A stretch of 64,000 nt of DNA, from NCBI RefSeq assembly GCF_902713615.1, contig NC_052162.1, forward strand, positions 114,818,742-114,882,741. The letters are read 5' to 3'. Positions within the stretch are counted from its first letter, which is position 1. Every line of letters begins with the position of its first letter. The notes beneath the pieces are model-generated. The model was not told the origin of the DNA and did not search any database. It saw only the letters and a program-made list of their open reading frames with translations. The translations under genes and the position numbers were made by a program. Below, in pieces: positions 1 to 58,030 of the stretch. The stretch is from Scyliorhinus canicula. Taxonomy: Eukaryota.

Positions 1-469
1 TCCGACCGTACTGATCAGATCGCAACAGCCTCTCCGACTATACTGATCGGATCGTAACAGCCTCTCCGACCATACTGATTGGATCGTAACAGCCTCTCCG
101 ACCACACTGATCGGATCGCAACAGCCTCTCCGACTATACTGATCGGATTGTAACAGCCTCTCCGACCGTACTGATCGGATCGTAACAACCTCTCCGACCG
201 TACTGATCGGATCATAACAGCCTCTCCGACCATACTGATCGGATCATAACAGCCTCTCCGACCACACTGATCAGATCGTAACAGCCTCTCCGGCCGTACT
301 GATCGCATCGTAACAGCCTCTCCGACCACACTGATCGGATCGTAACAGCCTCTCCGACCGTACTGATCGGATCGTAACAGCCTCTCCGACCGTACTGATC
401 GGGTCGTAACAGCCTCTCCGACCGTACTGATCGGATCGTAACAGCCTCTCCGACCGCACTGATCGGATC
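1..469. repeat. 32-bp CpG-rich minisatellite (TCCGACCGTACTGATCGGATCGTAACAGCCTC), about 14.5 copies, runs off the window start
   Basis: TCCGAC recurs at 1, 33, 65 and onward; variants are mostly CG>CA/TA changes. Confidence 0.95.
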
Positions 470-489
470 ACATCAATAGAAACCAGGCT

Positions 490-770
490 GACGTACAAAA
501 GTCTAACAGGATTAGACAGGGTAGATTCAGAAAGAATGTTCTCGATGGTGGGGGAGTCCAGAACTGGAGGTCATAATTTGAGGATAAGGGATGGTAAACC
601 TTTTAGGACTGAGGCGTGGGGAAATTTCTTCACCCAGAGACTGGTGAATCTTTGCAATTCACTATCACAGAAAATAGTTGAGGCCAAAACGTTGTGTAAT
701 TTCAAGAAGTAATTAGATACAGTTCTTGGGGCTGAAGGGATCAATGGATATGGAGGGAAGGCTCAGGGTA
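490..770 (+). mobile_element. CR1 LINE 3' end fragment
   Basis: Decayed translation resembles YKxLTGLDRVDSERMF...NFFTQRxVNLxNSL, the CR1 ORF2 C-terminus. Confidence 0.8.
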
Positions 771-771
771 T

Positions 772-892
772 TCACAGAATTATAGAATTTACAGTGCGGA
801 AGGAGGCTATTCGGCCCATCGAGTCTGCACCGGCCCTTGGTAAGAGCACCCCACTTAAGCCCACACCTCCAACCTATCCCTGTAACCCAACC
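772..892 (-). mobile_element. HE1-type SINE 3' tail fragment
   Basis: ATAGAATTTACAGTGC..GGCCCATCGAGTCTGCACC, the same tail as the full copy at 49787-50142. Confidence 0.75.
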
Positions 893-1578
893 CTCTATCC
901 TCTCTGGCAGACCCACTATTCTGACATTCTGCCATCTGGACCGGTTTTCCTGGTCCTCCACTTTCCCTCTTCGGCTCCCTTGGGCCGTCACCAACCTTCT
1001 CACCTCCGTTTCCAGAGCTTCGACCCTGTCGTTCTGGTCCGAGGCAGCTTTCTCCAACTCCAGGATTGTTTTCTCCTGTGCCTCCACCTTCCTTCCCAGG
1101 CCTTTGATGGTTCGCTGCATTGGGTTTGTCGCCTCTGACATCACCTTCATCATCGTGTGGAGCTCCATCCTGATCACCTTCATGGCATTTAGCTCTCTTT
1201 CCAGCACCATTCTCCATTAGTCCCCCTGAGTGTGTGGGGGTGGGGGAGGGGGGGGGGGGGTCGCTGCGTCCTGCTCCGCAGTATAGTTCACCGGCTTTTC
1301 CCCCTCCAGGTTCGCCTGAACCTCCGCCTCGCCTCGTGTGGCCTCCTGTCTGTGCACCCGCAGTTCCTGCCCCTTTCCTTCGCTGCTGCTCCTAATATCT
1401 CACCATCCCCTCTGTTTGTTGCTGCCAAGCATGTTCCTTCCTTGCGTCTTTCACCCTTGGATGGATTTTGGTGGGCTTTTAAAGCCGGAATTTCCGATAA
1501 ATTGCCTCTGTTGGGTTTGTTTGGGAGGAGAGCCACCTGATGTGTGTCCGCTCAGCACATCGCTACCACCAGAAGTCT
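893..1578 (-). mobile_element. L1-clade LINE 5'UTR plus ORF1 N-terminal fragment
   Basis: ORF 713-1210 has a coiled coil followed by EDQENRSRWQNVRIVGLPE (L1 ORF1p motif); its 5' end matches the short piece at 53683-53815. Confidence 0.8.
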
Positions 1579-2059: not shown

Positions 2060-2800
2060 TGGACCAAAGCTCCTTGTGATGAAGACAATTCCTTCAGACT
2101 GATCAGCATCACCTTCAGCCTCAGAATTCTCTCTGCCATGTGTCACTTTGATGACCCTGGTTTTCCACATTGGGAAGTTCATCACAATGATATTTTCAGT
2201 CGGACCTGAAACTGCTGCTAATTGTTCCCCAGTCATTCCTGGGGTTCATTCACCTATTAGTGCTGTTCCAATTCTGACTATTGATTGATATGAAATGAAA
2301 ATCGCTTATTGTCACGAGTAGGCTTCAATGAAGTTACTGTGAAAAGCCCCTAGTCGCCACATTCCGGCGCCTGTCCGGGGAGGCTGGTACGGGAATCGAA
2401 CCGTGCTGCTGGCCTGCTTTAAAAGCCAGTGATTTAGCCTGGTGAGCTAAACCAGCCCCCTATCTAGATCTGCTAAAGATACTTTCACCCTAATTCACAA
2501 TCTGTCCAAGTCCAAATATGCATCATAGATATCCAATGAATCATCTTTCTTGTAAACCTCATCAACGAAACCCGAATGGAAAATCCAAACTTTAATCAGG
2601 ATCCAACTGACGGGCGCCCAGCTCCCAGAATACTTTGCTTCTGATTTTTCCTTTGTTAGGAAGTGAGAATGCCGAGGCCGGACCTTGTTTCCTCCTTGGT
2701 GGGGACGTAACCCTTGTCCACATCTCCACTTCATTCTTCCACTGGTCGTATGGCTCAGACTCCGAGAACATCGGCGAGTAATCAGACCCTGACAATTTCC
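2060..2800 (-). mobile_element. Ty1/Copia (GalEa-like) gag fragments, split by a SINE
   Basis: PMFSESEPYDQWKNEVEMWTRVT..KQGPA..SLP..KIRSKVF; DEVYKKDDSLDIYDAY; acidic pre-protease segment EGIVFITRSF; frameshifted. Confidence 0.6.
2292..2460 (-). mobile_element. tRNA-derived short SINE (head GGGGCTGGTTTAGC, tail GTGACAATAAGCGATTTTCATTTCA)
   Basis: A box and B box (GGTTCGATTCCC) on the minus strand; similar copies at 21558-21727, 22282-22410, 27212-27371, 63697-63867. Confidence 0.85.
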
Positions 2801-3179: not shown

Positions 3180-4365
3180 ATCCAGCCTCCGGTGTTGCCC
3201 TGGTGACGGGCCGGTGGGCGGGACTAGGCCTCCTCCCGCACCGCTCGCTCCGGACTCTGAGCCGCACCGACTGCCCGGTGAGCCGGGCCCGCCTGTGCCG
3301 CCTGCAGAGCCCTGGACACCCCGGTGTTTATGCCGGTGGGAACCCAGGGAACCCTGAAGGGAATCGCCGTCCCGCAGCTGGAGGCGCTGGGCTGCCAAAT
3401 CTGCCTGGGCAACACCTACCACCTGGGCATGAGGCTGGATGATGTTGTCAGCAGTACAGTGACTGGGCCGAGGGTGGAGGAAGCCATGTTCAGGTCTGTT
3501 CGCTGGTTGGATCGCTGCATTGCAGCAAACATGAATCCCGGGCAGCAGAGTCTATTTGCCATTATCCAGGGGGGTCTGGATGCTGAACTGCGGAAGAAAT
3601 GTCTGACAGATGATTAAACGTGACGTCTCTGGTTTTGCCATCGGAGGATTGAGTGGCGGGGAGGAGAAGGATCATTTCTGGAGAATGGTGAAGCTGAGCA
3701 CAGAGTACCTCCCACCCGAGAAACCACGTTACCTAATGGGAGTCGGGTATGCGACAGATCTGGTGGTGTGTGTGGCTGTGGGCTGTGACATGTTTGACTG
3801 TGTATTTCCCACACGCACAGCGCAGTTTGGATCTGCACTCGTTCCCTGGGGATCTTTGCAGTTGAAGCACAGGCAATATGCCAAGGATTTCGGGCCCATC
3901 GATGAGGATTGTGAATGCCCGACTTGTAAGAGGTACACTCGAGCATATCTCCACGCTCTGTTCAGGAGTGACACTGCCGCCCTCCATCACATCACCATCC
4001 ATAACATTGCCTACCAGCTGAACCTGATGCGCTTTATTCGTGAGAGTATTCAGCAGGAGAAATTCCCAGCGTTCGTTCAGCAGTTCATGAAGCGGATGTA
4101 TGGGAGTGTAGAACAGTACCTACGCTGGGCAGTTGAAGCATTAAGCACTGTCAATATTAAACTGGAATAAACACTGTCACCAGGAATGGGTTATGTGCTT
4201 CAAGATCTGTTGCTGGGTGAAGATGTGGAACCCGGCCACAGCATCAGTGAACGAGGCAGCTCCCATCATGTGGCTCTGATCTCTCCCACTGTTACTCTCA
4301 CCCCTGTTGTGTTGCTGAATGTGTAATTTGTTACAAAAATAAAAGTGATTTGTTAAAAAAAGAAA
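3180..4365 (+). pseudogene. QTRT1: Processed pseudogene of queuine tRNA-ribosyltransferase catalytic subunit 1
   Basis: [80 protein letters not shown]; intronless; frameshifts near 3310 and 3610; internal deletion at about 3434; AATAAA at 4338 followed by an A-rich tail. Confidence 0.95.
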
Positions 4366-5062
4366 TGCTTCCTTGATAAACAATGTAGAACACAAGTGAC
4401 AACAATCTCCGGTTACTCGTCACAGGATCTATCCGGGAATGTGCCGATCCTGGCCAGGCTGCCTGGTGTTCAGGCTGGAGAGGGAATTTTGTTGTAGGTT
4501 AGTTGGATGCAATTCCTGGAGTAAAAATGTGAGTTGCTGATCCTGCCCTCGTCCAGCCTTCCTCAGAACCTGCCTCGTCTCTGCCCGGTGTGAACAATCG
4601 GTTCCACCCCAATTGGGTGAGGTGCTGAGGAATTGACTGAAGGTTTGTTAGCTGAAGGACAGTGATAGCAAGCAGCAAATTCGTGTTGGTTTGACATTGG
4701 TAAGGACGAGGGGTTCACACACTCCATCGCAAAGGGTCACAGCTACATCTCCGCTTCTCTTCCTGTCAGCTCAGCCGTGGCACACCAACCCCACCTCACA
4801 AACCCAGAAGCTGCTCACACTTACCGCAGCTGGAGCTTCAGGACTGAGGACCACTGAGATATCTAACTGTAGGGAGTATAATGGCTGAGCTAACACCGTG
4901 TACGACCCTGGAGAGCTACCTCAGCAGATGCCCAGAGGGAACGCAACCGTGTACCTCAGCCAGCGAGCAGCTGGGGTGCTGACAACACGGACTGGAAATA
5001 CCACAGGATGACCATGGGTTTATCAACCATTGTCGACCAGGCTTTGACTGTAATTCTGCGCG

Positions 5063-5634
5063 ACTCCACTAGATGGTGCAGTTGGCACCCTGCAGTCTGA
5101 TATTACTCCACTAGATGGTGCAGTTGGCACCCTGCAAATTGAGATTACTCCACTAGATGGTGCAGTTGGCACCCTGCAGTCTGAGATTACTCCACTAGAT
5201 GGTGCAGTTGGCACCCTGCAATCTGAGATTACTCCACTAGATGGTGCAGTTGGCACCCTGCATCCTGAGATTACTCCACTAGATGGTGCAGTTGGCACCC
5301 TGCAGTCTGAGATTACTCCACTAGATGGTGCAGTTGGCACCCTGCAATCTGAGATTACTCCACTAGATGGTGCAGTTGGCACCCTGCATCCTGAGATTAC
5401 TCCACTAGATGGTGCAGTTGGCACCCTGCAGTCTGAGATTACTCCACTAGATGGTGCAGTTGGCACCCTGCAGTCTGAGATTACTCCACTAGATGGTGCA
5501 GTTGGCACCCTGCAGTCTGATATTACTCCACTAGATGGTGCAGTTGGCACCCTGCAATCTGAGATTACTCCACTAGATGGTGCAGTTGGCACCCTGCATT
5601 GTCTGAGATTACTCCACTAGATGGTGCAGTTGGC
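5063..5634 (+). repeat. 42-bp tandem array, 14 copies, each containing a CTCF-like motif CCACTAGATGGTGC
   Basis: CCACTAGATGG starts at 5066, 5108 ... 5570 (period 42) and at 5614. Confidence 0.95.
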
Positions 5635-6301
5635 TGGGTTTAGCCAATCCTGGTTTCTACAGTAACCAATAGGCTCAAAACAAATATTAAAAGTATTTTG
5701 GAGAGAAAAAGATATTTACACTAGAGGTGTGAAATTGATATATTACTGGTCAACAGGAATAATTATTGACCAACTTTGTCAGCAAACTTCCGACAGTCAA
5801 GTATATATTTTTAATTCTATTCCCATTGCTGGATTCAGCAACAGACTGGGTATTTGTTCATCTATTCACACAGACTGGGTATTTGCTGAACTCTTATTCT
5901 ATGTATAATCAATGACTCATTTCTTCTCTCGTCATTAGCAGTTGTATTAAGAATCTTGTGAAAATAAAAGAAAAAATCTCCTGCCAGAAATCATCTGGGA
6001 GATTTGCTAAAACTTTTTTTTAAATCCAGTCTCAGGGTGGACTCAATCTCTATTTGGTGTGGATTTGTTCACAGAGTGAAATGTTACATTTATAGACCAC
6101 CTGACACCACCTGATGTCAGTCAGTGTCTCTTTCTGCTCCTTTAAAACAAATAACATTGAATAGGCAGTGAAACAAAAAACAAATTACCAAAGTAAAGTT
6201 ATAAAACTTGAAACTAAAATGTTATCTTGTGAGTCAATGATGCAGCTCAACCCCCGCAGTGCCCACCGGGAATGAAGAATGGCTCAAGTAACCATCTAAT
6301 C

Positions 6302-6686
6302 CAGGGGTGGGCAAACTTTTCCGTGCAAGGGCCACATTCAGAAATTCACAATTTTAAAGGGCCGCATAGTATATTAAGTAAAATGATTACTTCACCCGGT
6401 TATGATTCTGGGCGCCTCATGTAGAACATAGAACAGTACAGCACAGAACGGGCCCTTCGGCCCTCGATGTTGTGCCGAGCAATGATCACCCTACTCAAGT
6501 CAACGTATCCACCCTATACCAGTAAGTAACCCAACAGCCCCCCCCCCCCCCCATTAACCTTTAAAAAAAAAAAATTTTTTTTTTAAAGTTTATAAAAAAA
6601 AAAAAATTTTTTAATGACTTGGTGGGCCGCATAAAGACCTTTGGCGGGCCGCATGCGGCCCACGGGCCATAGTTTGCCCACCCCTA
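6302..6686. mobile_element. hAT (Charlie-like) MITE with a nested SINE/CR1 tail
   Basis: TIRs CAGGGGTGGGCAAACT / AGTTTGCCCACCCCTA; 8-bp TSD ATCTAATC at 6294-6301 and 6687-6694. Confidence 0.9.
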
Positions 6687-6760
6687 ATCTAATCAATACT
6701 GTGTATACTGAAACCCAACAGATACAATTAACACCCACAGTCAGAGCATCTAAAAAGTCT

Positions 6761-7354
6761 CTAATCAGTGTGACTGCCCTGGTGTCTTAGCAGCTCAGAT
6801 GAACAAATAAATCCCTTCCCACACACAGAGCATGTGAACGGCCTCTCTCCACTGTGAACCCGCTGGTGTGACAGCAGGTTGGATAACTGAGCGAATCCCT
6901 TCCCACACGCAGAGCAAGTAAAAGGCCGCTCCCCATTGTGAATTCGCTGATGTGTCTGCAGGTGGGATGACTGAGCGAATCCCTTCCCACAGTCAGAGCA
7001 GGAGAACGGCTTTTCCCTGGTGTGAACTCGCTGATGTTTCTGTAGAGTGGATGAATCAATGAATCCCTTTGCACACCGAGAGCAGGTGTATGGCCGTTCT
7101 CCAGTGTGAACTCTCTGGTGTAACTTCAGGTTGGATGACTTGGTGAACCCTTTCCCACACTCAGAGCAGGTGAATGGCCTCTCCCGGGTGTGAATTCGCT
7201 GATGTAACTGAAGGTTAAATAACCGAGCGAATCCCTTCCCACACTCAGGGCAGGTGAACGGCCTCTCCCCAGTGTGGCTGCGTCGATGAATTTCCAGCTC
7301 AGATGGGGCTTTGTATCCCTTCCCACAATCCCCACATTTCCATGGCTTCTCCAT
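6761..7354 (-). CDS. C2H2 zinc-finger protein ZNF-A1, 197 aa, 7 fingers, no KRAB/SCAN/BTB domain
   Basis: [13 protein letters not shown] start, 7 intact C2H2 fingers with TGERP-type linkers; exon-3 acceptor near 7704; exons 1 and 2 not found. Confidence 0.8.
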   Translation of the reverse strand: MEKPWKCGDCGKGYKAPSELEIHRRSHTGERPFTCPECGKGFARLFNLQLHQRIHTRERPFTCSECGKGFTKSSNLKLHQRVHTGERPYTCSRCAKGFIDSSTLQKHQRVHTREKPFSCSDCGKGFAQSSHLQTHQRIHNGERPFTCSACGKGFAQLSNLLSHQRVHSGERPFTCSVCGKGFICSSELLRHQGSHTD

Positions 7355-7896
7355 TTGGCTGGTGTTTATGTGACTCGCCAGGTTTGGGAATCGGTTGATG
7401 GCTTGGCTCACACACACACACAACACACACAGTCTCTCCCTGCTATGAATGGTGTGATTTTTTTTTCAGGCTGTGTTAAGTTATTTTCACAGTCAGTTAA
7501 CTGTAACACTCCCACTTGTGTGTCTCAGTGCTCTTTCAGTCACACTGATGATTAAAATCTTTTGAAGTCGTCAAAACAAACATTTCTCCCTCGAGACTCA
7601 AGGCCAATGATATTCAGGCCCTGTGAATCTGAATGTCTTTGGCAGATGCTGACATGATGTCTGGTTTGAGATTTCTGTCTGTAAATCTTCCTCTTTAAAC
7701 ATCCTGTAAAAGGAGTTTCCAAAATTAATTATCAGTACAGGATAGAAATTCAGAAAAGACAATTCTGTTTTTATGGAATATTGTTTTCCCTTTTGTTTCT
7801 CCCAAAACTGTAATTTTCCACCCCACACACACTCCCTCCATTCCAGCCAGACAAATAAATGTGTTAAGCTGTGGGAGGAACGGATGTCAATGTATT

Positions 7897-11879: not shown

Positions 11880-12885
11880 GTGGCAAGCAAAGTTTAAGAT
11901 TCACATTAGTTCAAAGGAAGAGGTTCAGAAAGTGGGTAAGAGTGTAGTAAGCCTGAGGATTGGGAACTTCTTTAGAATTCAGCAAAGGCGGACCAAGAAA
12001 CTGATGATGAGGAATTAGAATATGAGAGCAAACTCAGAATACTCAACATGGATTTAGGAATAGGAAATCATGTTTGACGAACGTTTTGGAGTTTTTGAGG
12101 ATGTCACTAACAGAATTGATCAAGGGGAGTCCGTGGACGTGGTACACTTGGAGTTTCAGGATGTTCTTTGATAAATACCCCACAGGAGGTTAGTTAGCAA
12201 AATGAAAGCACACATGTGATAGGAGGTAATATACCGATGCTGCAGTGGCTAGCCCTGTTGCCTACGGCGCTGAGGACCCAGGTTCGATCCTGTCCCCAGG
12301 TCACTGTCCGTGTGGAGTTTGCACATTCTCCCTGTGTCTGCGTGGGTCTCACCCCATCAACCCAAAGATGTGCAGGGTAGGTGGATTGGTCATGCTAAAT
12401 TGCCCCTTAATTGGGTACTCTAAATTTAATTTTAAAAATGTAGATACTCTGCCATTTTTCTATTCCCACTACTATAAATTCTCCTGTCTCTCCCTGTAAT
12501 GGACCCATGTTTGTCTTAGCCATATATTTCCTTTTTACGTACCTATAGAAGCTTTTACAGTCCACACAGCAACTACTGTTTGGTGGTCTATAAACAACTC
12601 TTACCAATGTTTGCTGCCCTCTGCTGTTTCTTAGCTCCACCCAAACAGTTTCCACATTTTGTATTCCTGAGCTGAGATCCTCCCTTACGTACTGACATCA
12701 TCCTAGTTATCGGCGAAGCACCGCCTCCTTTTCCTTTTTGCCCGCAGTATTAACAAACATAATGATCAGACCTTCAGGCCCAGCACCAATCCCTGTGACA
12801 GATCGCTCGTTGCATCTTGCCAACCAGAAAATGACCTATTTATGCCGACTCTCGGTTTTCTGGTAGCTTGCCAATCATTCACTGT
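11880..12885. mobile_element. Mixed CR1 fragments (+ and -) with an A-tailed short SINE at about 12240-12440
   Basis: SCLTNxLEFFEDVT-like segment on +; ETVWVELRNSRGQQTLVxVVYRPPNS (CR1 endonuclease) on -. Confidence 0.7.
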
Positions 12886-13195: not shown

Positions 13196-13532
13196 TAGAA
13201 CATAGAACAGTACAGCACAGAACAGGCCCTTCTGCCCTCGATGTTGTGCCGAGCAATGATCACCCTACTCAAACCCACGTATCCACCCTATACCCGTAAC
13301 CCAACAACCCGCCCCCAAACCTTATTTTTTAGGACACTACGGGCAATTTAGCATGGCCAATCCACCTAACCCGCACATCTTTGGACTGTGGGAGGAAACC
13401 GGAGCACCCGGAGGAAACCCACGCACAAACAGGGAGGACGTGCAGACTCCACACAGTGACCCAGCCGGGAACCGAACCTGGGACCCTGGAGCTGTGAAGC
13501 ATGTATGCTAACCACCATGCTACCGTGCTGCT
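13196..13532 (-). mobile_element. HE1-type V-SINE
   Basis: TAGAACATAGAAC tail, V-core and tRNA-like head. Confidence 0.85.
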
Positions 13533-24916: not shown

Positions 24917-25250
24917 ACATAGAATCATACAATCTCTACAGTGCAGGAGGCCATTCAGCCCATCGAGTCTGAGCTGACCCTTGGAAAGAGTACCCTACCT
25001 CGGCCCAAACCTTATGCCTGTAACCCAATAACCTCTCCTAACCTCTTTTGGACACTTAGGGACAATTTAGCACAGCCAATCCACCTAACCTGCAGATCTT
25101 TGGTCTTTGGGAGGAACCCGGAGCACTCGAGGGAAACCAACGAACATATGGGGAGAAAGTGCAAACTCCACACAGACACCCGAACTGGAATTGAACCCGG
25201 GTCCCTGGCGCTGAGAGGCAGGAGTGTGAACTACTGTGCCACCGAGCCGT
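24917..25250 (-). mobile_element. HE1-type SINE
   Basis: Tail, decayed V-core and B box; its head runs into the adjacent minisatellite. Confidence 0.8.
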
Positions 25251-25908
25251 CCCTGGGCCAGAGCCGTCCCTGTGCCACCGAGCCATCCCTGTGCCATCCT
25301 GCCATCCCTGTGCCACCGAGCCATCCCTGTGCCACTGAGCCGTCCCTGTGCCATCGTCCCATCCCTGTGCCACTGAGCCGTCCCTGTGCCACCGTGCCAT
25401 CCCTGTGCCACCGAGCCCTCCCTGTGCCACCGAGCCCTCCCTGTGCCACCGAGCCGTCCCTGTGCCACCGAGCCGTCCCTGTGCCATCGTCCCATCCCTG
25501 TGCCATTGTGCCATCTCTGTGCCACCGAGCCCTCCCTGTGCCACCGAGCCGTCCCTGTGCCACCGAGCCGTCCCTGTGCCATCGTCCCATCCCTGTGCCA
25601 TTGTGCCATCCCTGTGCCACCGAGCCCTCCCTGTGCCACCGAGCCGTCCCTGTGCCATCGTCCCATCCCTGTGCCATTGTGCCATCTCTGTGCCACCGAG
25701 CCGTCCCTGTGCCACTGAGCCGTCCCTGTGCCACCGTGCCGTCCCTGTGCCACTGAGCCGTCCCTGTGCCACCGAGCTGTCCCTGTGCCACCGTGCCATC
25801 CCTGTGCCACCGAGCCGTCCCTGTGCCACCGAGCCGTCCTTGTGCCACCGAGCCGTCCCTGTGCCACCGAGCCGTCCCTGTGCCATCGTGCCATCCCTGT
25901 GCCATCAT
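25233..25908. repeat. 19-bp minisatellite (CCCTGTGCCACCGAGCCGT and variants), about 35 copies
   Basis: Direct inspection; accounts for the repetitive ORFs in this region. Confidence 0.95.
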
Positions 25909-26282: not shown

Positions 26283-26483
26283 GTGGAGATGCTGGTGGTG
26301 GACTGGGGTGAGCACAGTAAGAAGTCTTACAACACCAGGTTAAAGTGCAACAGGTTTGTTTCAACACTAGCTTTTGGAGCACAGCTCCTTCACTCACACT
26401 CACCTGAGGAAGGAGCAGTGCTCCGAAAGCTAGTGATTCAAAACAAAACTATTGGACTTTAATCTGGTGTTGTAAGACTTCTT
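26283..26483. mobile_element. Palindromic Penelope-derived element with a hammerhead core at 26400-26436 (+)
   Basis: AAGAAGTCTTACAACACCAG ... CTGGTGTTGTAAGACTTCTT inverted arms; TCAC-CTGAGGA-AGGAGC-AGT-GCTCC-GAAA-GC-TA-GTGA. Confidence 0.8.
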
Positions 26484-26487
26484 GACT

Positions 26488-26906
26488 TGGAGGACGAGGT
26501 TCACTGGAGGGAGAGGTAATGATGACCCTCCCTGCTGAGCAATCCCTGTCCTTGTTCTGGAGGAGGGGGTTCACTGGAGGGTGAGGTAATGATGACCCTC
26601 CCTGCTGAGCAGTCCCTGTCCTTGTCTTGGAGGAGGAGGTTCACTCGAGGGAGAGGTAATGATGACCCTCCCTGCTGAGCAGTCCCTGTCCTTGTCTTGG
26701 AGGAGGAGGTTCACTGGAGGGAGAGGTAATGATGACCCTCCCTGCTGAGCAGTCCCTGTCCTTGTCTTGGAGGAGGGGGTTCACTGGAGGGAGAGGTAAT
26801 GATGACCCTCCCTGCTGAGCAATCCCTGTCCTTGTTCTGGAGGAGGGGGTTCACTGGAGGGAGAGGTAATGATGACCCTCCCTGCTGAGGGACAGTCCCT
26901 GTCCTT
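26488..26906. repeat. 70-bp minisatellite, 6 copies, plus a decayed copy at about 26215-26280
   Basis: GAGGTAATGATGACCCTC recurs with period 70 (26513, 26583 ... 26863). Confidence 0.95.
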
Positions 26907-38819: not shown

Positions 38820-39115
38820 CCGATTACAGTTTAGCTGGGGCTCATGGTTGCCATACTTGGTCAAATGCTGCTTCGACGTCAAGGGCAGTCACTCTCACCT
38901 CACCTCTGGCATTCATGTCCATGTTTCAACTCAGACTGCAACGAGGTCAGGAGCTGAGTGACCCTGGCGGAACCCAAACTGAGCATCCGTGAGCAGGTTA
39001 TTGCTGAGTAAGTACCACTTGATGGCACTATTCACGACTCCTTCCATCACTTTGCTGATGATAGAGAATAGACTGAAAGGGTGACAATTGGTTGGGTTTC
39101 ATTTGTCCTGTTTAC
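38820..39115 (-). mobile_element. L2/CR1-group LINE RT fragment
   Basis: SLFSIISKVMEGVVNSAIK..NNLLTDAQFGFRQGHSAPDL. Confidence 0.7.
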
Positions 39116-54269: not shown

Positions 54270-57200
54270 AACAAAGAACAAAGAAAAGTACATCACAGGA
54301 ACAGGCCCTTCAGCCCTCCAAGCCCGTGCCAATCATGATGTGCTAACTAATAAAAAACCTTCTGCCCAGACTCGGTCCGTATCCCTCTACTTCCTCCCTA
54401 TTCATGGACTCATCCAGATGTCTCTTAAATGTTGCTAATGTGCTGCTTCCACCACATCCTCTGGCAGCGCGTTCCAGGCACCCACCAGTCTCTGTGTGAG
54501 AAACTTACTGCTCACATCTCCCTTAAACTTTCCCCCTCTCACTGTGAACCCTGGAATTGACACTTCCACCCTTGGAAAAAGCCTCTGACTATCCACCCTG
54601 TCTATGCCTCTCAAAATTTTGTACACCTCAATCAGGTCTCCCCTCAGCCTCCATCTATCCAGTGAAAACAATCTTAGTTTATTCAACCTCTACCCATAGC
54701 CAACAACCAGGAGACCAGGCAACATCCTGGTGAACCTTCTTTGCACTCTCTCCGAAGCTTCCACATCTTTCTGACAGTGTAGTGACCAGAACGCAATACT
54801 CCAAATGCGACGTGACCAAGGTTTTATACAGCTGCAACATGATTTTCCCAGCTCCTGTACTCAATGCCCTGGCTGATGAAGGCAAGCATACCGTATGCCT
54901 TCTCAATCACCTTGGCCGCCTGTGTTGCCACTTTTAGGGAACTGTGGACCTGCCTGTTCAGATCCCTCTGTATGTTAATGTTCCTGAGGGTTCTACCATT
55001 TACAGAATAACTCATACCTAGATTTGATCCTCCAGAATGCACCACCTCAAATTTGTTCGGATAAACTCTATCTGCCATTTCTGTGCCCAAGTCTCCAATC
55101 TATCTCTATCCTGTTGTATCCTCTGACAATCCTCAGCACTATCAGCAACTCTGCTAATCTTCATGTCATCCGCAAACTTACTGAGCAGACTACCCACATT
55201 TTCCCCCAGATCATTTATATATACTACAAACAACAAAGTTCCCAGCACTGATCCCTGCGGAACACCACTAGCTACCGATCTCCATTCTGAAAAACACCCT
55301 TTCCATCGCGACTCTCTGTTTCTATAACCAAGCCAGTTCTGTATCCATCTAGCCAGCCCGCCCCGAATCCCATGTGATTTTAGTTTTTTCCAGTCTGTCA
55401 TGTGGGACCTTATCAAACGCCTTACTAATGCCCATATAAACTTCACCCACCGCCCTTCCCTCATCAATTTTCTTTGTCAGCACTTCAAACAACTCAATCA
55501 CTTTGGTGAGACATGACCTTCCCCATACAAAACCATGTTGCCTGTCACTAATTAGTCCATTTTCCTCCAAATCTGCATACATCCTGTCCCTCACCTTTTC
55601 CAAAAGCTTCCCCACCACTGATATCAGGCTCACCAGCCAATAATTTGCTGGATTATTCCTGCTTCCTTTCTTAAACAAGGAACAACATTGGCTATTCCCC
55701 AGTCCTCTGGGACCTCCCCTGTGGCCAAAGAGGATGTGAAGATATCTGTTAAGGCCCCAGCTATTTCTTCCATTGCCTCCCTGTAGTAACCTGGGATAGA
55801 TCCCATCCGGCCCTGGGGACTTGTCTACCTTAATGCAATTTCGGATACTCAACACTTCCTCCTTTGATGTATTGACGTTCTCAAGAGCTTTCACACACCT
55901 ATTCCTGATCTCAACATCCATCATGTGCTTCTCTCTAATGAAGACCGAATACAAAATACTCCTTATGATTTCACCCACTTCCTGCGGGTCCATGCATAAC
56001 TTCCCTCCATTGTCCTTGAGTGGGCCTACTCTTTCTCTTGCTACCCTCTTGCTCCTAATATATGCATAAAAAGCCTTGGGATTCTCCTTGACCGTGTTTG
56101 CTTAAGGCATTTCATGGCCAGTTTGGCCGGCCTAATTCCACGTTTCAGTTCCTACTTTCACTGTACTCCTCAAGGGCTTTGTCAGTTTTTAGATACCGAG
56201 ACCTATTGTATGCTTCCTTTTTCCTTATGACTAAGCTTACAATTTGTCATCCATGGTTCCCGAATCCTGCCATTTCTATCCTTCATTTTTGCAGGGACAT
56301 GCCTGTCCTGCACTTCAATCAACTGGTCTTTAAAAGCCTCCCACATGTTAGACGAGGATTTGCTCTCAAATAACTGCTCCCAATCCACATTCCCCAGTTT
56401 CTGTCTAATTTGTATGTAATTGGCCCTCTCCAATTAAGCATCCCCACCCGTGGGCCACTCTTGTCCTTATCCCTGACTACTCAAAATCTTATGGAATTAT
56501 GGTCACTAAGCCCAGAATGCTCTCCCACTGAAACATTAATCATCTGGCCTGGCTCATTCCACAATGCCAAGTCTAGTATGGCCCCCTCCCTGGTTGGATT
56601 GTCAACATACTGTATCAAAAAGCCCTCATGGACACATCTAACAAATTGCTCTCCATCCGAGCCCCTGGCTGTAAGTGATTCTCAGTCAATATGGGGGAAG
56701 TTCAAGTCACCCATCACATCTACCCTGCTTTTTCACGTTTTCAGTATCTGACTACACAATTGCTCCTCTGTCTCCTGCGGACTATTGGGAGGCCTATAGT
56801 ACACTCCCAACATTGTGATTTCACCCTTCTTATTCCTGAGCTCCACCCATAATGCCTCATTGAAAGATCCCTCCAATGTGTCCTCCCTCAGCTGTGATCT
56901 GCTCCCTAATCAGCAATGCCCACCTCTTTAGTTTCCCCTTCTGTCCCGTCTAAGACAACGATATCCCGGAATGTTAAGCTGCCAGTCCTGTCCCTCCTTT
57001 AGCTATTTCTCCGTAATTGCAATTACATCAGAGTTCGATGCAGTAATCCAGGCTCTCAGTTCATCTCTCTCACCTGATATACTTCTTGCATTGAAGCAAC
57101 TGCATTCCAGACCTACAGTCCCGCTGCGCCCTGCGGCTTCCCTCTGAGCCCTGCGGCTTCCCTCTGAGCCCTGCTGCTTCCCTCTGAGCCCTGCTGCTTC

Positions 57201-58030
57201 CCTCTGAGCCCTGCTGCTTCCCTCTGCTGCTCTAACTCTGAGCCCTGCTGCTTCCCTCTGCTGCTCTAACTCTGAGCCCTGCGGCTTCCCTCTGCTGCTC
57301 TAACTCTGAGCCCTGCGGCTTCCCTCTGCTGCTCTAACTCTGAGCCCTGCGGCTTCCCTCTGCTGCTCTAACTCTGAGCCCTGCGGCTTCCCTCTGCTGC
57401 TCTAACTCTGAGCCCTGCGGCTTCCCTCTGCTGCTCTAACTCTGCGCCCTGCGGCTTCCCTCTGCTGCTCTAACTCTGCGCTATGTTTATCTCAGTCTCA
57501 CTGAGCCCTGCGGATTCCCTCTGCTGCTCTAACTCTGCGCCCTGCGGCTTCCCGCTGAGCCCTGCGGCTTCCCTCTGCTGCTCTAACTCTGCACCCTGCG
57601 GCTTCCCTCTGAGCCCTGCTGCTTCCCTCTGAGCCCTGCGGCTTCCCGCTGAGCCCTGCGGCTTCCCTCTGCTGCTCTAACTCTGCGCTATGTTTATCTC
57701 AGTCTCACTGAGCCCTGCGGATTCCCTCTGCTGCTCTAACTCTGCGCTATGTTTATCTCAGTCTCACTGAGCCCTGCGGATTCCCTCTGCTGCTCTAACT
57801 CTGAGCCCTGCGGCTTCCCTCTGCTGCTCTAACTCTGCGCCCTGCGGCTTCCCTCTGCTGCTCTAACTCTGCGCCCTGCTGCTTCCCTCTGCTGCTCTAA
57901 CTCTGAGCCCTGCGGCTTCCCTCTGCTGCTCTAACTCTGCGCTATGTTTATCTCAGTCTCACTTTATCCCCCAGTCTCTACACTTACTGGTCTGCTGTTC
58001 TGGTTCCCACCACCCTGCCAAACTAGTTTT
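54270..58030 (-). mobile_element. Long decayed CR1 LINE (endonuclease, RT and tail) with an expanded repeat upstream of ORF2
   Basis: KSPGPDGIYPRLL, QHGFVWGRSCLT, SGVPQGSVLG, KFADDMK; CFNARSI-type ORF2 start near 57100. Confidence 0.9.
57122..57962. repeat. Composite minisatellite of nested 20-, 34- and 59-bp units sharing AGCCCTGCGGCTTCCCTCTG
   Basis: Periods measured at 57147/57167, 57241/57275 and 57711/57770. Confidence 0.9.

What the first reader, a model, noticed from the sequence alone, without database searches (positions are those of the whole stretch)
5063..5634. Fourteen same-orientation CTCF-like sites in tandem at the cluster edge
Seen: every 42-bp unit has an invariant CCACTAGATGGTGC, and variation is confined to the spacer (TGCAG/TGCAA/TGCAT, GAGAT/GATAT). 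In most units TGCA(G/A) lies 12 nt upstream of the CCACT. Known: the CTCF core consensus is CCASYAGRKGGCRS, with one C>T mismatch here, and fingers 9-11 read an upstream TGCAG module at about this spacing (recalled, not computed). Inference: a minisatellite-amplified directional insulator or loop anchor, with all motifs facing the ZNF cluster and 1.1 kb from the first gene. It could bound a silenced or co-regulated ZNF domain.
Basis: partly seen in the sequence, partly recalled or inferred. Interest (0 to 1): 0.75.

Follow-up and report, generated by a model that had tools for sequence, protein, structure and literature searches.

The report
Shark minisatellite of CTCF-like sites
A real 42-base repeat, copied 14 times just past the tail end of a catshark zinc-finger gene, carries in every copy a middling match to the binding site of the genome-folding protein CTCF; it may hold CTCF, but nothing shows it is more than a young repeat of a kind this genome has several of.

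Summary
Window 5063-5634 is a 42-bp tandem array (13.6 units, 95% alike) with 14 exact, same-strand copies of CCACTAGATGGTGC.

Designed strong sites score 22-25 bits. TGCAGT sits at the canonical upstream offset (-17 to -12) in 6 of the 13 units that have an in-array upstream. The CC that finger 9 reads is absent. All sequence variation falls inside this upstream module and its linker, not in a neutral spacer.

The array lies 1.1 kb beyond the stop codon of the leftmost, minus-strand ZNF gene, so it is at a gene tail and not a promoter. The stretch is probably transcribed. Whether this is a cluster edge cannot be told: ZNF genes continue to the right, and the left of the window is unknown.

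A second, G-rich minisatellite in the same window gives near-equal CTCF scores. This scan has already noted at least five other CTCF-like tandem arrays elsewhere in this genome, one of them a 42-bp array between ZNF genes 2.8 Mb away.

Binding, conservation and copy-number variation could not be tested. Verdict: a young slippage-born minisatellite able to bind CTCF; a selected insulator role is unproven, at about 20%.

The parts
5063..5634 (+). 42-bp minisatellite, 13.6 units. 38 of the 42 columns never vary among the 12 full units. An exact three-unit (126-bp) block occurs twice (units 3-5 and 6-8).
5066..5627 (+). Span holding the 14 exact CTCF-like cores (CCACTAGATGGTGC) at 5066 + 42n, the last at 5614. 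Each 19-mer scores 13.08 bits, p 9.2e-6.
5091..5096 (+). First of six intact TGCAGT upstream half-modules, at positions -17 to -12 of the next core. They precede the cores at 5108, 5192, 5318, 5444, 5486 and 5528. The other units read TGCAAT, TGCAAA, TGCATC or TGCATTG.
6761..7426 (-). Leftmost zinc-finger reading frame of the window (7 C2H2 fingers). Its stop codon lies 1,127 bp to the right of the array. Candidate minus-strand poly(A) signals are at 6610, 5810 and 4033.
57191..57939 (-). 34-bp G-rich minisatellite whose units give CTCF-matrix hits of 11.9-12.9 bits on the minus strand. It serves as a control and is a possible convergent partner. All seven ZNF finger arrays of the window lie between the two arrays.

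Best explanation
This is a young minisatellite, made and homogenised by replication slippage or unequal exchange. Its unit is a mid-strength, two-part CTCF-type site, or descends from one.

Shown:
- The array, its 14 identical co-oriented cores and a duplicated three-unit block.
- The lack of any CpG in the array.
- Its position beyond the 3' end of a minus-strand ZNF gene.

Inferred:
- One CTCF could sit per unit. The upstream module plus the core plus room for fingers 1-2 spans about 38 bp of the 42, and 42 bp is four helical turns.
- Every bound molecule would have its N-terminal, cohesin-stalling side pointing right, toward the ZNF genes.
- With no CpG in the unit, binding could not be switched off by methylation within the motif.
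- The testis paralog CTCFL, which catsharks have, could bind too.

I rate occupancy by CTCF in at least some tissue at about 40-50%. I rate a selected boundary role at only about 20%. On this reading any CTCF loading is an opportunistic by-product of a repeat that expanded for mechanical reasons.
For: The array and cores are real. Units differ by 1.6 of 42 positions on average, and an exact three-unit block (units 3-5 = 6-8) is duplicated; identity at lag 126 (0.966) exceeds that at lag 42 (0.952), the signature of recent unequal exchange. Each unit holds a small hairpin-forming dyad. The core scores 13.1 bits against 22-25 for designed strong sites. The four variable columns hit the upstream module and its linker, the opposite of what constraint on an extended site predicts. 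CpG count is 0 across the array and there is no CpG island around it. A second minisatellite in the same window scores 11.9-12.9 bits. About 6 core-only chance matches are expected in roughly 8,000 minisatellites, and the scan's notes list about that many CTCF-like arrays in this genome (unchecked leads). The window holds six non-ZNF tandem arrays in 64 kb, so such repeats are common here.
Against: The two-part likeness is harder to get by chance. A core at this score together with TGCAGT (or at least 6 of 8 upstream positions) at one of two canonical offsets is expected 0.003-0.05 times in about 8,000 arrays. That test is post hoc, and TGCAGT occurs twice per unit. The four variable columns are clustered (P about 0.007 for a span of 7 or less); this could mean constraint on the other 35 bp rather than a mutation hotspot. 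Two CTCF-like arrays in convergent orientation bracket all seven ZNF genes of the window. Cartilaginous fish use the CTCF orientation code (PMC10115646).
Confidence: 0.55

Rival explanations
1. It is a selected, copy-number-tunable CTCF boundary or loop anchor. The 14 co-oriented sites load several CTCF molecules, stall cohesin coming from the ZNF side and insulate the ZNF genes from the non-ZNF DNA on the left. They may pair with the minus-strand array at 57191-57939 to enclose seven ZNF genes.
For: The core matches at p about 9e-6 in every unit. TGCAGT stands at the canonical -17 offset. The core is invariant and all variation is clustered elsewhere. No ZNF fingers lie left of the array within the window. 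A convergent partner array exists. The two-part motif is conserved from lamprey to human (PMC5504073), and inward-pointing motifs mark skate TAD boundaries. Clustered same-direction sites strengthen boundaries in mammals (PMC6945661, PMC7422557).
Against: The sites are mid-strength. The finger-9 contacts at -10 and -9 are absent, and the upstream module is the variable part. The partner array has two core mismatches and lies inside the cluster, not at its end, since ZNF genes continue beyond the window. The array looks young. No conservation, binding or insulation data exist. Convergent orientation has a 1-in-4 prior.
Confidence: 0.2
2. The array is part of a transcript: either the long 3' UTR of the adjacent minus-strand ZNF gene or a plus-strand read-through from the QTRT1 retrocopy. 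Any function would be at the RNA or co-transcriptional level, for example poly(A) site choice or polymerase pausing, or binding of some other factor. The CTCF likeness would be incidental.
For: Twelve small runs (75-338 million letters, six studies; kind recorded as '?' or guessed as RNA), too small to cover a shark genome as DNA, hold 49-71% of the sampled words of 4300-6700; whole-genome runs hold 64-71%. The right flank is only 44% of that stretch, so both sides of the array must be covered (inference). Poly(A) signals fit either strand: minus at 5810 and 4033, plus at 5686 and 5963.
Against: The repeat frames that stay open match no protein or family. No Rfam family matches and the fold is no better than shuffles (z = -1.8). 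Being transcribed does not exclude CTCF binding.
Confidence: 0.12
3. The 42-bp unit belongs to a dispersed element (a transposon or a segmental-duplication module of ZNF clusters) that carries a CTCF-like site and tends to expand locally, as SINE B2 spread CTCF sites in rodents. This array would be one member of that family.
For: Unchecked scan notes describe two other 42-bp CTCF-like arrays in this genome. One lies between two ZNF genes 2.8 Mb away. One lies upstream of IgL and is said to have grown from an old dispersed element. A 131-bp CTCF-bearing satellite is noted with tens of thousands of copies.
Against: No other copy of the unit or of the left flank exists in the 64-kb window. No terminal inverted repeats surround it and ARAGORN finds nothing tRNA-like in it. 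Look-up by sequence among the scan's notes was blank. Whether the other 42-bp arrays share this sequence is unknown.
Confidence: 0.1

Closest known systems
Clustered, co-oriented CTCF sites at TAD boundaries (mammals: PMC6945661, PMC7422557; skate boundaries: PMC10115646)
   Same: Several same-direction CTCF-type motifs packed together. The orientation would point into the neighbouring gene cluster. The two-part motif logic is conserved across vertebrates (PMC5504073).
   Different: Known clusters are separate sites spread over kilobases, often conserved and ChIP-verified. Here there are 14 near-identical sites at a 42-bp pitch made by one young repeat, mid-strength, with no binding or Hi-C data.
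CTCF-binding macrosatellites DXZ4 and Firre (PMC3491370)
   Same: A tandem repeat in which every unit carries a CTCF site, so that copy number sets the number of sites.
   Different: The macrosatellite units are kilobases long, and binding is shown and depends on chromatin state. Here the unit is 42 bp, the whole array is 0.57 kb, and binding is untested.
Repeat-borne waves of CTCF sites (SINE B2 and the like; PMC10982698; Schmidt 2012 as cited in PMC5504073)
   Same: A repetitive-DNA process multiplies a CTCF-type motif.
   Different: Those sites spread by retrotransposition to dispersed places. This one multiplied in place by slippage, and no dispersed copies are seen in the window.
Other CTCF-like tandem arrays noted by this scan in the same catshark genome (s1-253629, s1-249191, s1-207392, s1-223444, s1-268225)
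   Same: Same genome and same idea. Two have the same 42-bp period, and one of those also lies between ZNF genes on the same chromosome piece.
   Different: Sequence relatedness to this array is unknown. The KCTD9 array is reported as conserved in distant sharks, which could not be tested here.
Ordinary vertebrate minisatellites (VNTRs)
   Same: Unit of 10-100 bp, head-to-tail copies, high identity, higher-order variant blocks, intergenic or 3'-flank position.
   Different: Nothing structural differs; only the likeness of the unit to a two-part CTCF site.

Membership tests
CTCF-binding site (core plus upstream module) | Match to the 14-15-bp core read by fingers 3-7 | tested here: met
   13 of 14 consensus positions in all 14 copies. 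Mid-strength.
CTCF-binding site (core plus upstream module) | Upstream module TGCAGTNCC at -17 to -9, read by fingers 9-11 | tested here: inconclusive
   TGCAGT is at exactly -17 to -12 in 6 of 13 units, and TGCA in all. T(-12) is kept in 9 of the 12 full units, while C(-10) and C(-9) are replaced by T and G in all units.
CTCF-binding site (core plus upstream module) | Occupancy by CTCF in cells or in vitro | not testable with these tools
   No catshark CTCF ChIP-seq was found in the held papers. Catsharks do encode CTCF and CTCFL (PMC7471279).
CTCF boundary or loop anchor | Several co-oriented sites pointing into the insulated domain | tested here: met
   14 plus-strand motifs, with all ZNF finger arrays of the window to their right.
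CTCF boundary or loop anchor | Insulation or loop corner in contact maps, with cohesin retention | not testable with these tools
   No Hi-C or RAD21 data are available here.
CTCF boundary or loop anchor | Conservation of the sites at the orthologous place in related species | not testable with these tools
   Attempts through neighbouring proteins failed. The only close hit was the true multi-exon QTRT1 of S. torazame, returned without DNA.
Minisatellite (VNTR) | Head-to-tail units of 10-100 bp with high identity and higher-order variant blocks | tested here: met
Minisatellite (VNTR) | Copy-number polymorphism between individuals | not tested
Transposon-borne CTCF site family | Dispersed copies with transposon hallmarks | tested here: not met
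   Within the window only: no other copy, no flanking inverted repeats, nothing tRNA-like in the array. A genome-wide census was not possible.
CTCF macrosatellite (DXZ4 type) | Kilobase-sized unit | tested here: not met
   The unit is 42 bp.

The most novel reading that the evidence does not exclude
Sharks may build tunable chromatin boundaries from minisatellites. The plus-strand 42-bp array at 5063-5634 and the minus-strand 34-bp array at 57191-57939 would be convergent multi-site CTCF anchors enclosing a seven-gene ZNF sub-domain. Repeat copy number would set anchor strength, and the same device would recur beside other ZNF, immune and housekeeping loci of this genome.
Probability: 0.1. Interest if true: 0.7.

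Novelty: new member of a known kind. Interest (0 to 1): 0.35.

Why it matters
If CTCF really loads on such arrays, minisatellite expansion would be a fast, reversible way to make or strengthen chromatin boundaries. It would be distinct from the transposon waves known in mammals. It would also tie a highly mutable DNA class to the regulation of fast-evolving gene clusters in an early-branching vertebrate. If CTCF does not load, the case is a useful caution. In a minisatellite-rich genome, core-only CTCF matches in tandem repeats occur at about the rate chance predicts, so motif arrays alone should not be read as insulators.

Tried and rejected
- **Coding repeat.** Two of the six frames are open through the array, but the 189-aa minus-strand ORF has no relatives and no Pfam family. 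An open 14-codon unit is expected about half the time. Rejected.
- **Structured RNA or tRNA-derived SINE head.** ARAGORN finds nothing in the array. Rfam gives only a sub-threshold snoRNA hit outside it. The fold z-score is -1.8. Rejected.
- **Part of the QTRT1 retrocopy.** The retrocopy ends at its own AATAAA plus A-run near 4338-4368, about 700 bp before the array. Rejected.
- **Decayed repeat units in the flanks.** The left flank scores no better than shuffles. The right flank has one weak 11-of-12 match near 5718, reached by 7 of 300 shuffles. Not convincing.
- **Relation to the 84-bp zinc-finger coding repeat.** No BLAST similarity. Rejected.
- **Comparative loci.** Exact-protein look-ups found nothing. 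The ZNF word search was swamped by the family. The QTRT1 search led only to the real S. torazame gene, without DNA. The metagenome scan for the invariant 24-mer found nothing.
- **Reads.** For that reason the first ZNF gene's protein was never searched.
- **Literature search for the exact core.** Only unrelated primers turned up.
- **Pfam on the ORF at 713-1210.** My L1-ORF1 impression was not confirmed.

Full report
**Observation.** The stretch is as described. Tandem Repeats Finder gives 5063-5634, period 42, 13.6 copies, 95% matches and no indels at its resolution. The 14-mer CCACTAGATGGTGC occurs 14 times without mismatch. All copies are on the + strand, at 5066 + 42n; a 2-nt insertion makes the last interval 44. 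Shuffles of the window give 0.5 matches even with two mismatches allowed. Among the 12 full units only four of the 42 columns vary: columns 33, 34, 35 and 39.

**Core strength.** All 14 copies fit CCASYAGRKGGCRS with one mismatch, T for C at core position 12.
As a sanity check I scored three designed CTCF sites printed in bioRxiv 10.1101/2023.12.05.569896. They reach 22.4-24.8 bits of a possible 27.0.
- Each array unit scores 13.08 bits, exact p 9.2e-6 at the window's base composition. With C at core position 12 it would score 16.7.
- The sites pass the usual calling thresholds, for example the PWM score of 8 used inside ATAC peaks for skate boundaries (PMC10115646). They are middling, not strong.
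- Outside tandem arrays the window has two hits at p of 1e-5 or below, against 1.3 expected, so the p-values behave.

**Upstream module.**
- The designed sites read TGCAGT(T/A)CC, then a linker, then the core, with exactly 12 nt between TGCAG and CCA.
- The ZF3-ZF11 structure paper (PMC10484683) places finger 9 on -9 to -12, with specificity for C:G at -10 and T:A at -12. It places finger 11 on the G's at -15 and -16.
- In the array TGCAGT occupies -17 to -12 before six cores. The other units read TGCAAT, TGCAAA, TGCATC or TGCATTG.
- TGCA is invariant. T(-12) is kept in 9 of the 12 full units. Positions -10 and -9 are T and G instead of CC in every unit.
- So the distal half of the module is present and the finger-9 half is missing.
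- The variable columns are -13, -12, -11 and -7. The variation therefore sits in the module and its linker, not in a neutral spacer.

**Array dynamics.** Units differ on average at 1.6 of 42 positions.
- The variant strings of units 3-5 recur exactly in units 6-8.
- Identity at lag 126 (0.966) exceeds that at lag 42 (0.952). This is the mark of recent unequal exchange or slippage.
- Each unit holds a 5-bp dyad that forms a small hairpin, but the fold is not better than shuffles (z = -1.8).
- The four variable columns are clustered (P about 0.007 for a span of 7 or less). Their avoidance of the 19-bp matrix span is not significant on its own (P = 0.08).
- The array has no CpG at all, and its surroundings are not a CpG island.

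**Context.**
- To the left lie a processed QTRT1 pseudogene (Pfam TGT in two frames, 3324-4170, with its own AATAAA and A-run at 4338-4368) and other debris.
- A six-frame C2H2 scan finds seven finger arrays, the leftmost at 6770-7336 on the minus strand, and none left of the array.
- The array is therefore 1,127 bp beyond the stop codon (6761) of a minus-strand gene: a gene tail, not a promoter.
- Candidate poly(A) signals allow the gene to end at about 6590 or about 5790, before the array, or near 4010, with the array inside a 2.7-kb 3' UTR. Plus-strand signals stand at 5686 and 5963.
- Twelve small runs (75-338 million letters, six studies; their kind is '?' or a guess of RNA) hold 49-71% of the sampled words of 4300-6700. 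Whole-genome runs hold 64-71%.
- Such small runs cannot cover a shark genome as DNA, and the right flank is only 44% of the stretch. I infer that both sides of the array are transcribed.
- 'Cluster edge' is true only within the window. Scan notes place more ZNF genes beyond the right end. Nothing is known to the left.

**Controls and chance.**
- Of six non-ZNF tandem arrays in the window, two give CTCF-matrix hits: this one, and a G-rich 34-bp array at 57191-57939 (11.9-12.9 bits, minus strand, two core mismatches). The other four score 3.8 bits or less.
- A 42-bp unit holds a core hit this good with probability 7.7e-4. In roughly 8,000 minisatellites (about 6 per window over the 1,349 windows noted so far) about 6 are expected by chance.
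- The scan's notes list about that many CTCF-like arrays in this catshark genome: s1-253629 (42 bp, between two ZNF genes 2.8 Mb away), s1-249191 (42 bp, upstream of IgL), s1-207392, s1-223444 and s1-268225. These are unchecked leads. This kind of finding has therefore been made before by the scan, on other DNA.
- What lifts this array above chance is the upstream half-module. A core together with TGCAGT, or with at least 6 of 8 upstream positions, at one of two canonical offsets is expected only 0.003-0.05 times in 8,000 arrays. That test is post hoc, and TGCAGT occurs twice per unit.

**Does the logic apply in sharks?** Catsharks encode CTCF and CTCFL (PMC7471279). The two-part motif is shared from lamprey to human (PMC5504073). 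Skate TAD boundaries carry inward-pointing CTCF motifs (PMC10115646). I found no catshark CTCF ChIP-seq in the held papers.

**Reading.** My best explanation (0.55) is a young slippage-born minisatellite whose unit is, or descends from, a mid-strength two-part CTCF site.
- It can probably bind CTCF. One molecule per unit is sterically possible: about 38 bp are needed, and the ZF3-11 complex was crystallised on a 35-bp DNA.
- The 42-bp pitch equals four helical turns (inference).
- All bound molecules would present their cohesin-stalling side to the ZNF genes (inference).
- I put occupancy in some tissue at 40-50%.
- The rivals are a selected boundary (0.2), a role or mere presence inside a transcript (0.12), and membership in a dispersed repeat family (0.1).

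**Limits.** Binding, insulation, conservation, polymorphism and genome-wide copy number were all out of reach. Comparative routes through neighbouring proteins failed. No letters of places 7088-7123 were sent to any search tool, so the first ZNF gene's protein was left unsearched.

**Verdict.** It is a new member of a known kind, repeat-borne arrays of CTCF motifs. Interest is moderate to low.

Noticed in passing
window 57191-57939 (-): 34-bp G-rich, CpG-containing minisatellite (about 22 units, with 54-bp variant blocks). Its units give CTCF-matrix hits of 11.9-12.9 bits on the minus strand, convergent with the 42-bp array. All seven ZNF finger arrays of the window lie between the two.
   Followed up: partly
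window 3324-4170 (+), tail to about 4368: Processed pseudogene of QTRT1 (queuine tRNA-ribosyltransferase, Pfam TGT). It is intronless, has a frameshift near 3610, lacks an internal segment of the family, and keeps its own AATAAA (4338) and A-run. The true multi-exon QTRT1 of Scyliorhinus torazame is 97% identical over the last 186 residues.
   Followed up: partly
window 6422-6546; copies near 13196, 14157, 30174, 32014, 54275: Short dispersed element of about 125 bp (83-90% identity between the longer copies) in the 3' flank of the first ZNF gene and elsewhere in the cluster. Probably a SINE or MITE fragment.
   Followed up: no
window 1-469: 32-bp satellite (14.7 units, 91% alike) running off the left end of the window. 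What lies beyond it decides whether the 42-bp array is really at a cluster edge.
   Followed up: no
window 25234-25904 and 26481-26906: Two more minisatellites: 19 bp x 35 units and 70 bp x 6 units. Neither gives a CTCF-matrix hit (best -1.6 and 3.8 bits). They show how repeat-rich this region is.
   Followed up: partly
window 2378-2458 (-): ARAGORN calls a tRNA-Phe(aaa)-like sequence. It is more likely a pseudo-tRNA or SINE head than a working gene.
   Followed up: no
window 713-1210 (-): 165-aa coiled-coil ORF that looked like an L1 ORF1 protein by eye. Pfam gave only a sub-threshold SlyX coiled-coil hit, so the identity is open.
   Followed up: partly
window 12612-12630 (-) and 39012-39030 (+): The two best single-copy CTCF-matrix hits of the window (15.6 and 13.9 bits), both stronger than the array units and both inside the ZNF cluster.
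   Followed up: no
window 6553-6612: A/T homopolymer palindrome (A-runs and T-runs, arms of 15-20 nt) about 150 bp beyond the first ZNF gene's stop codon, next to a candidate ATTAAA signal.
   Followed up: no
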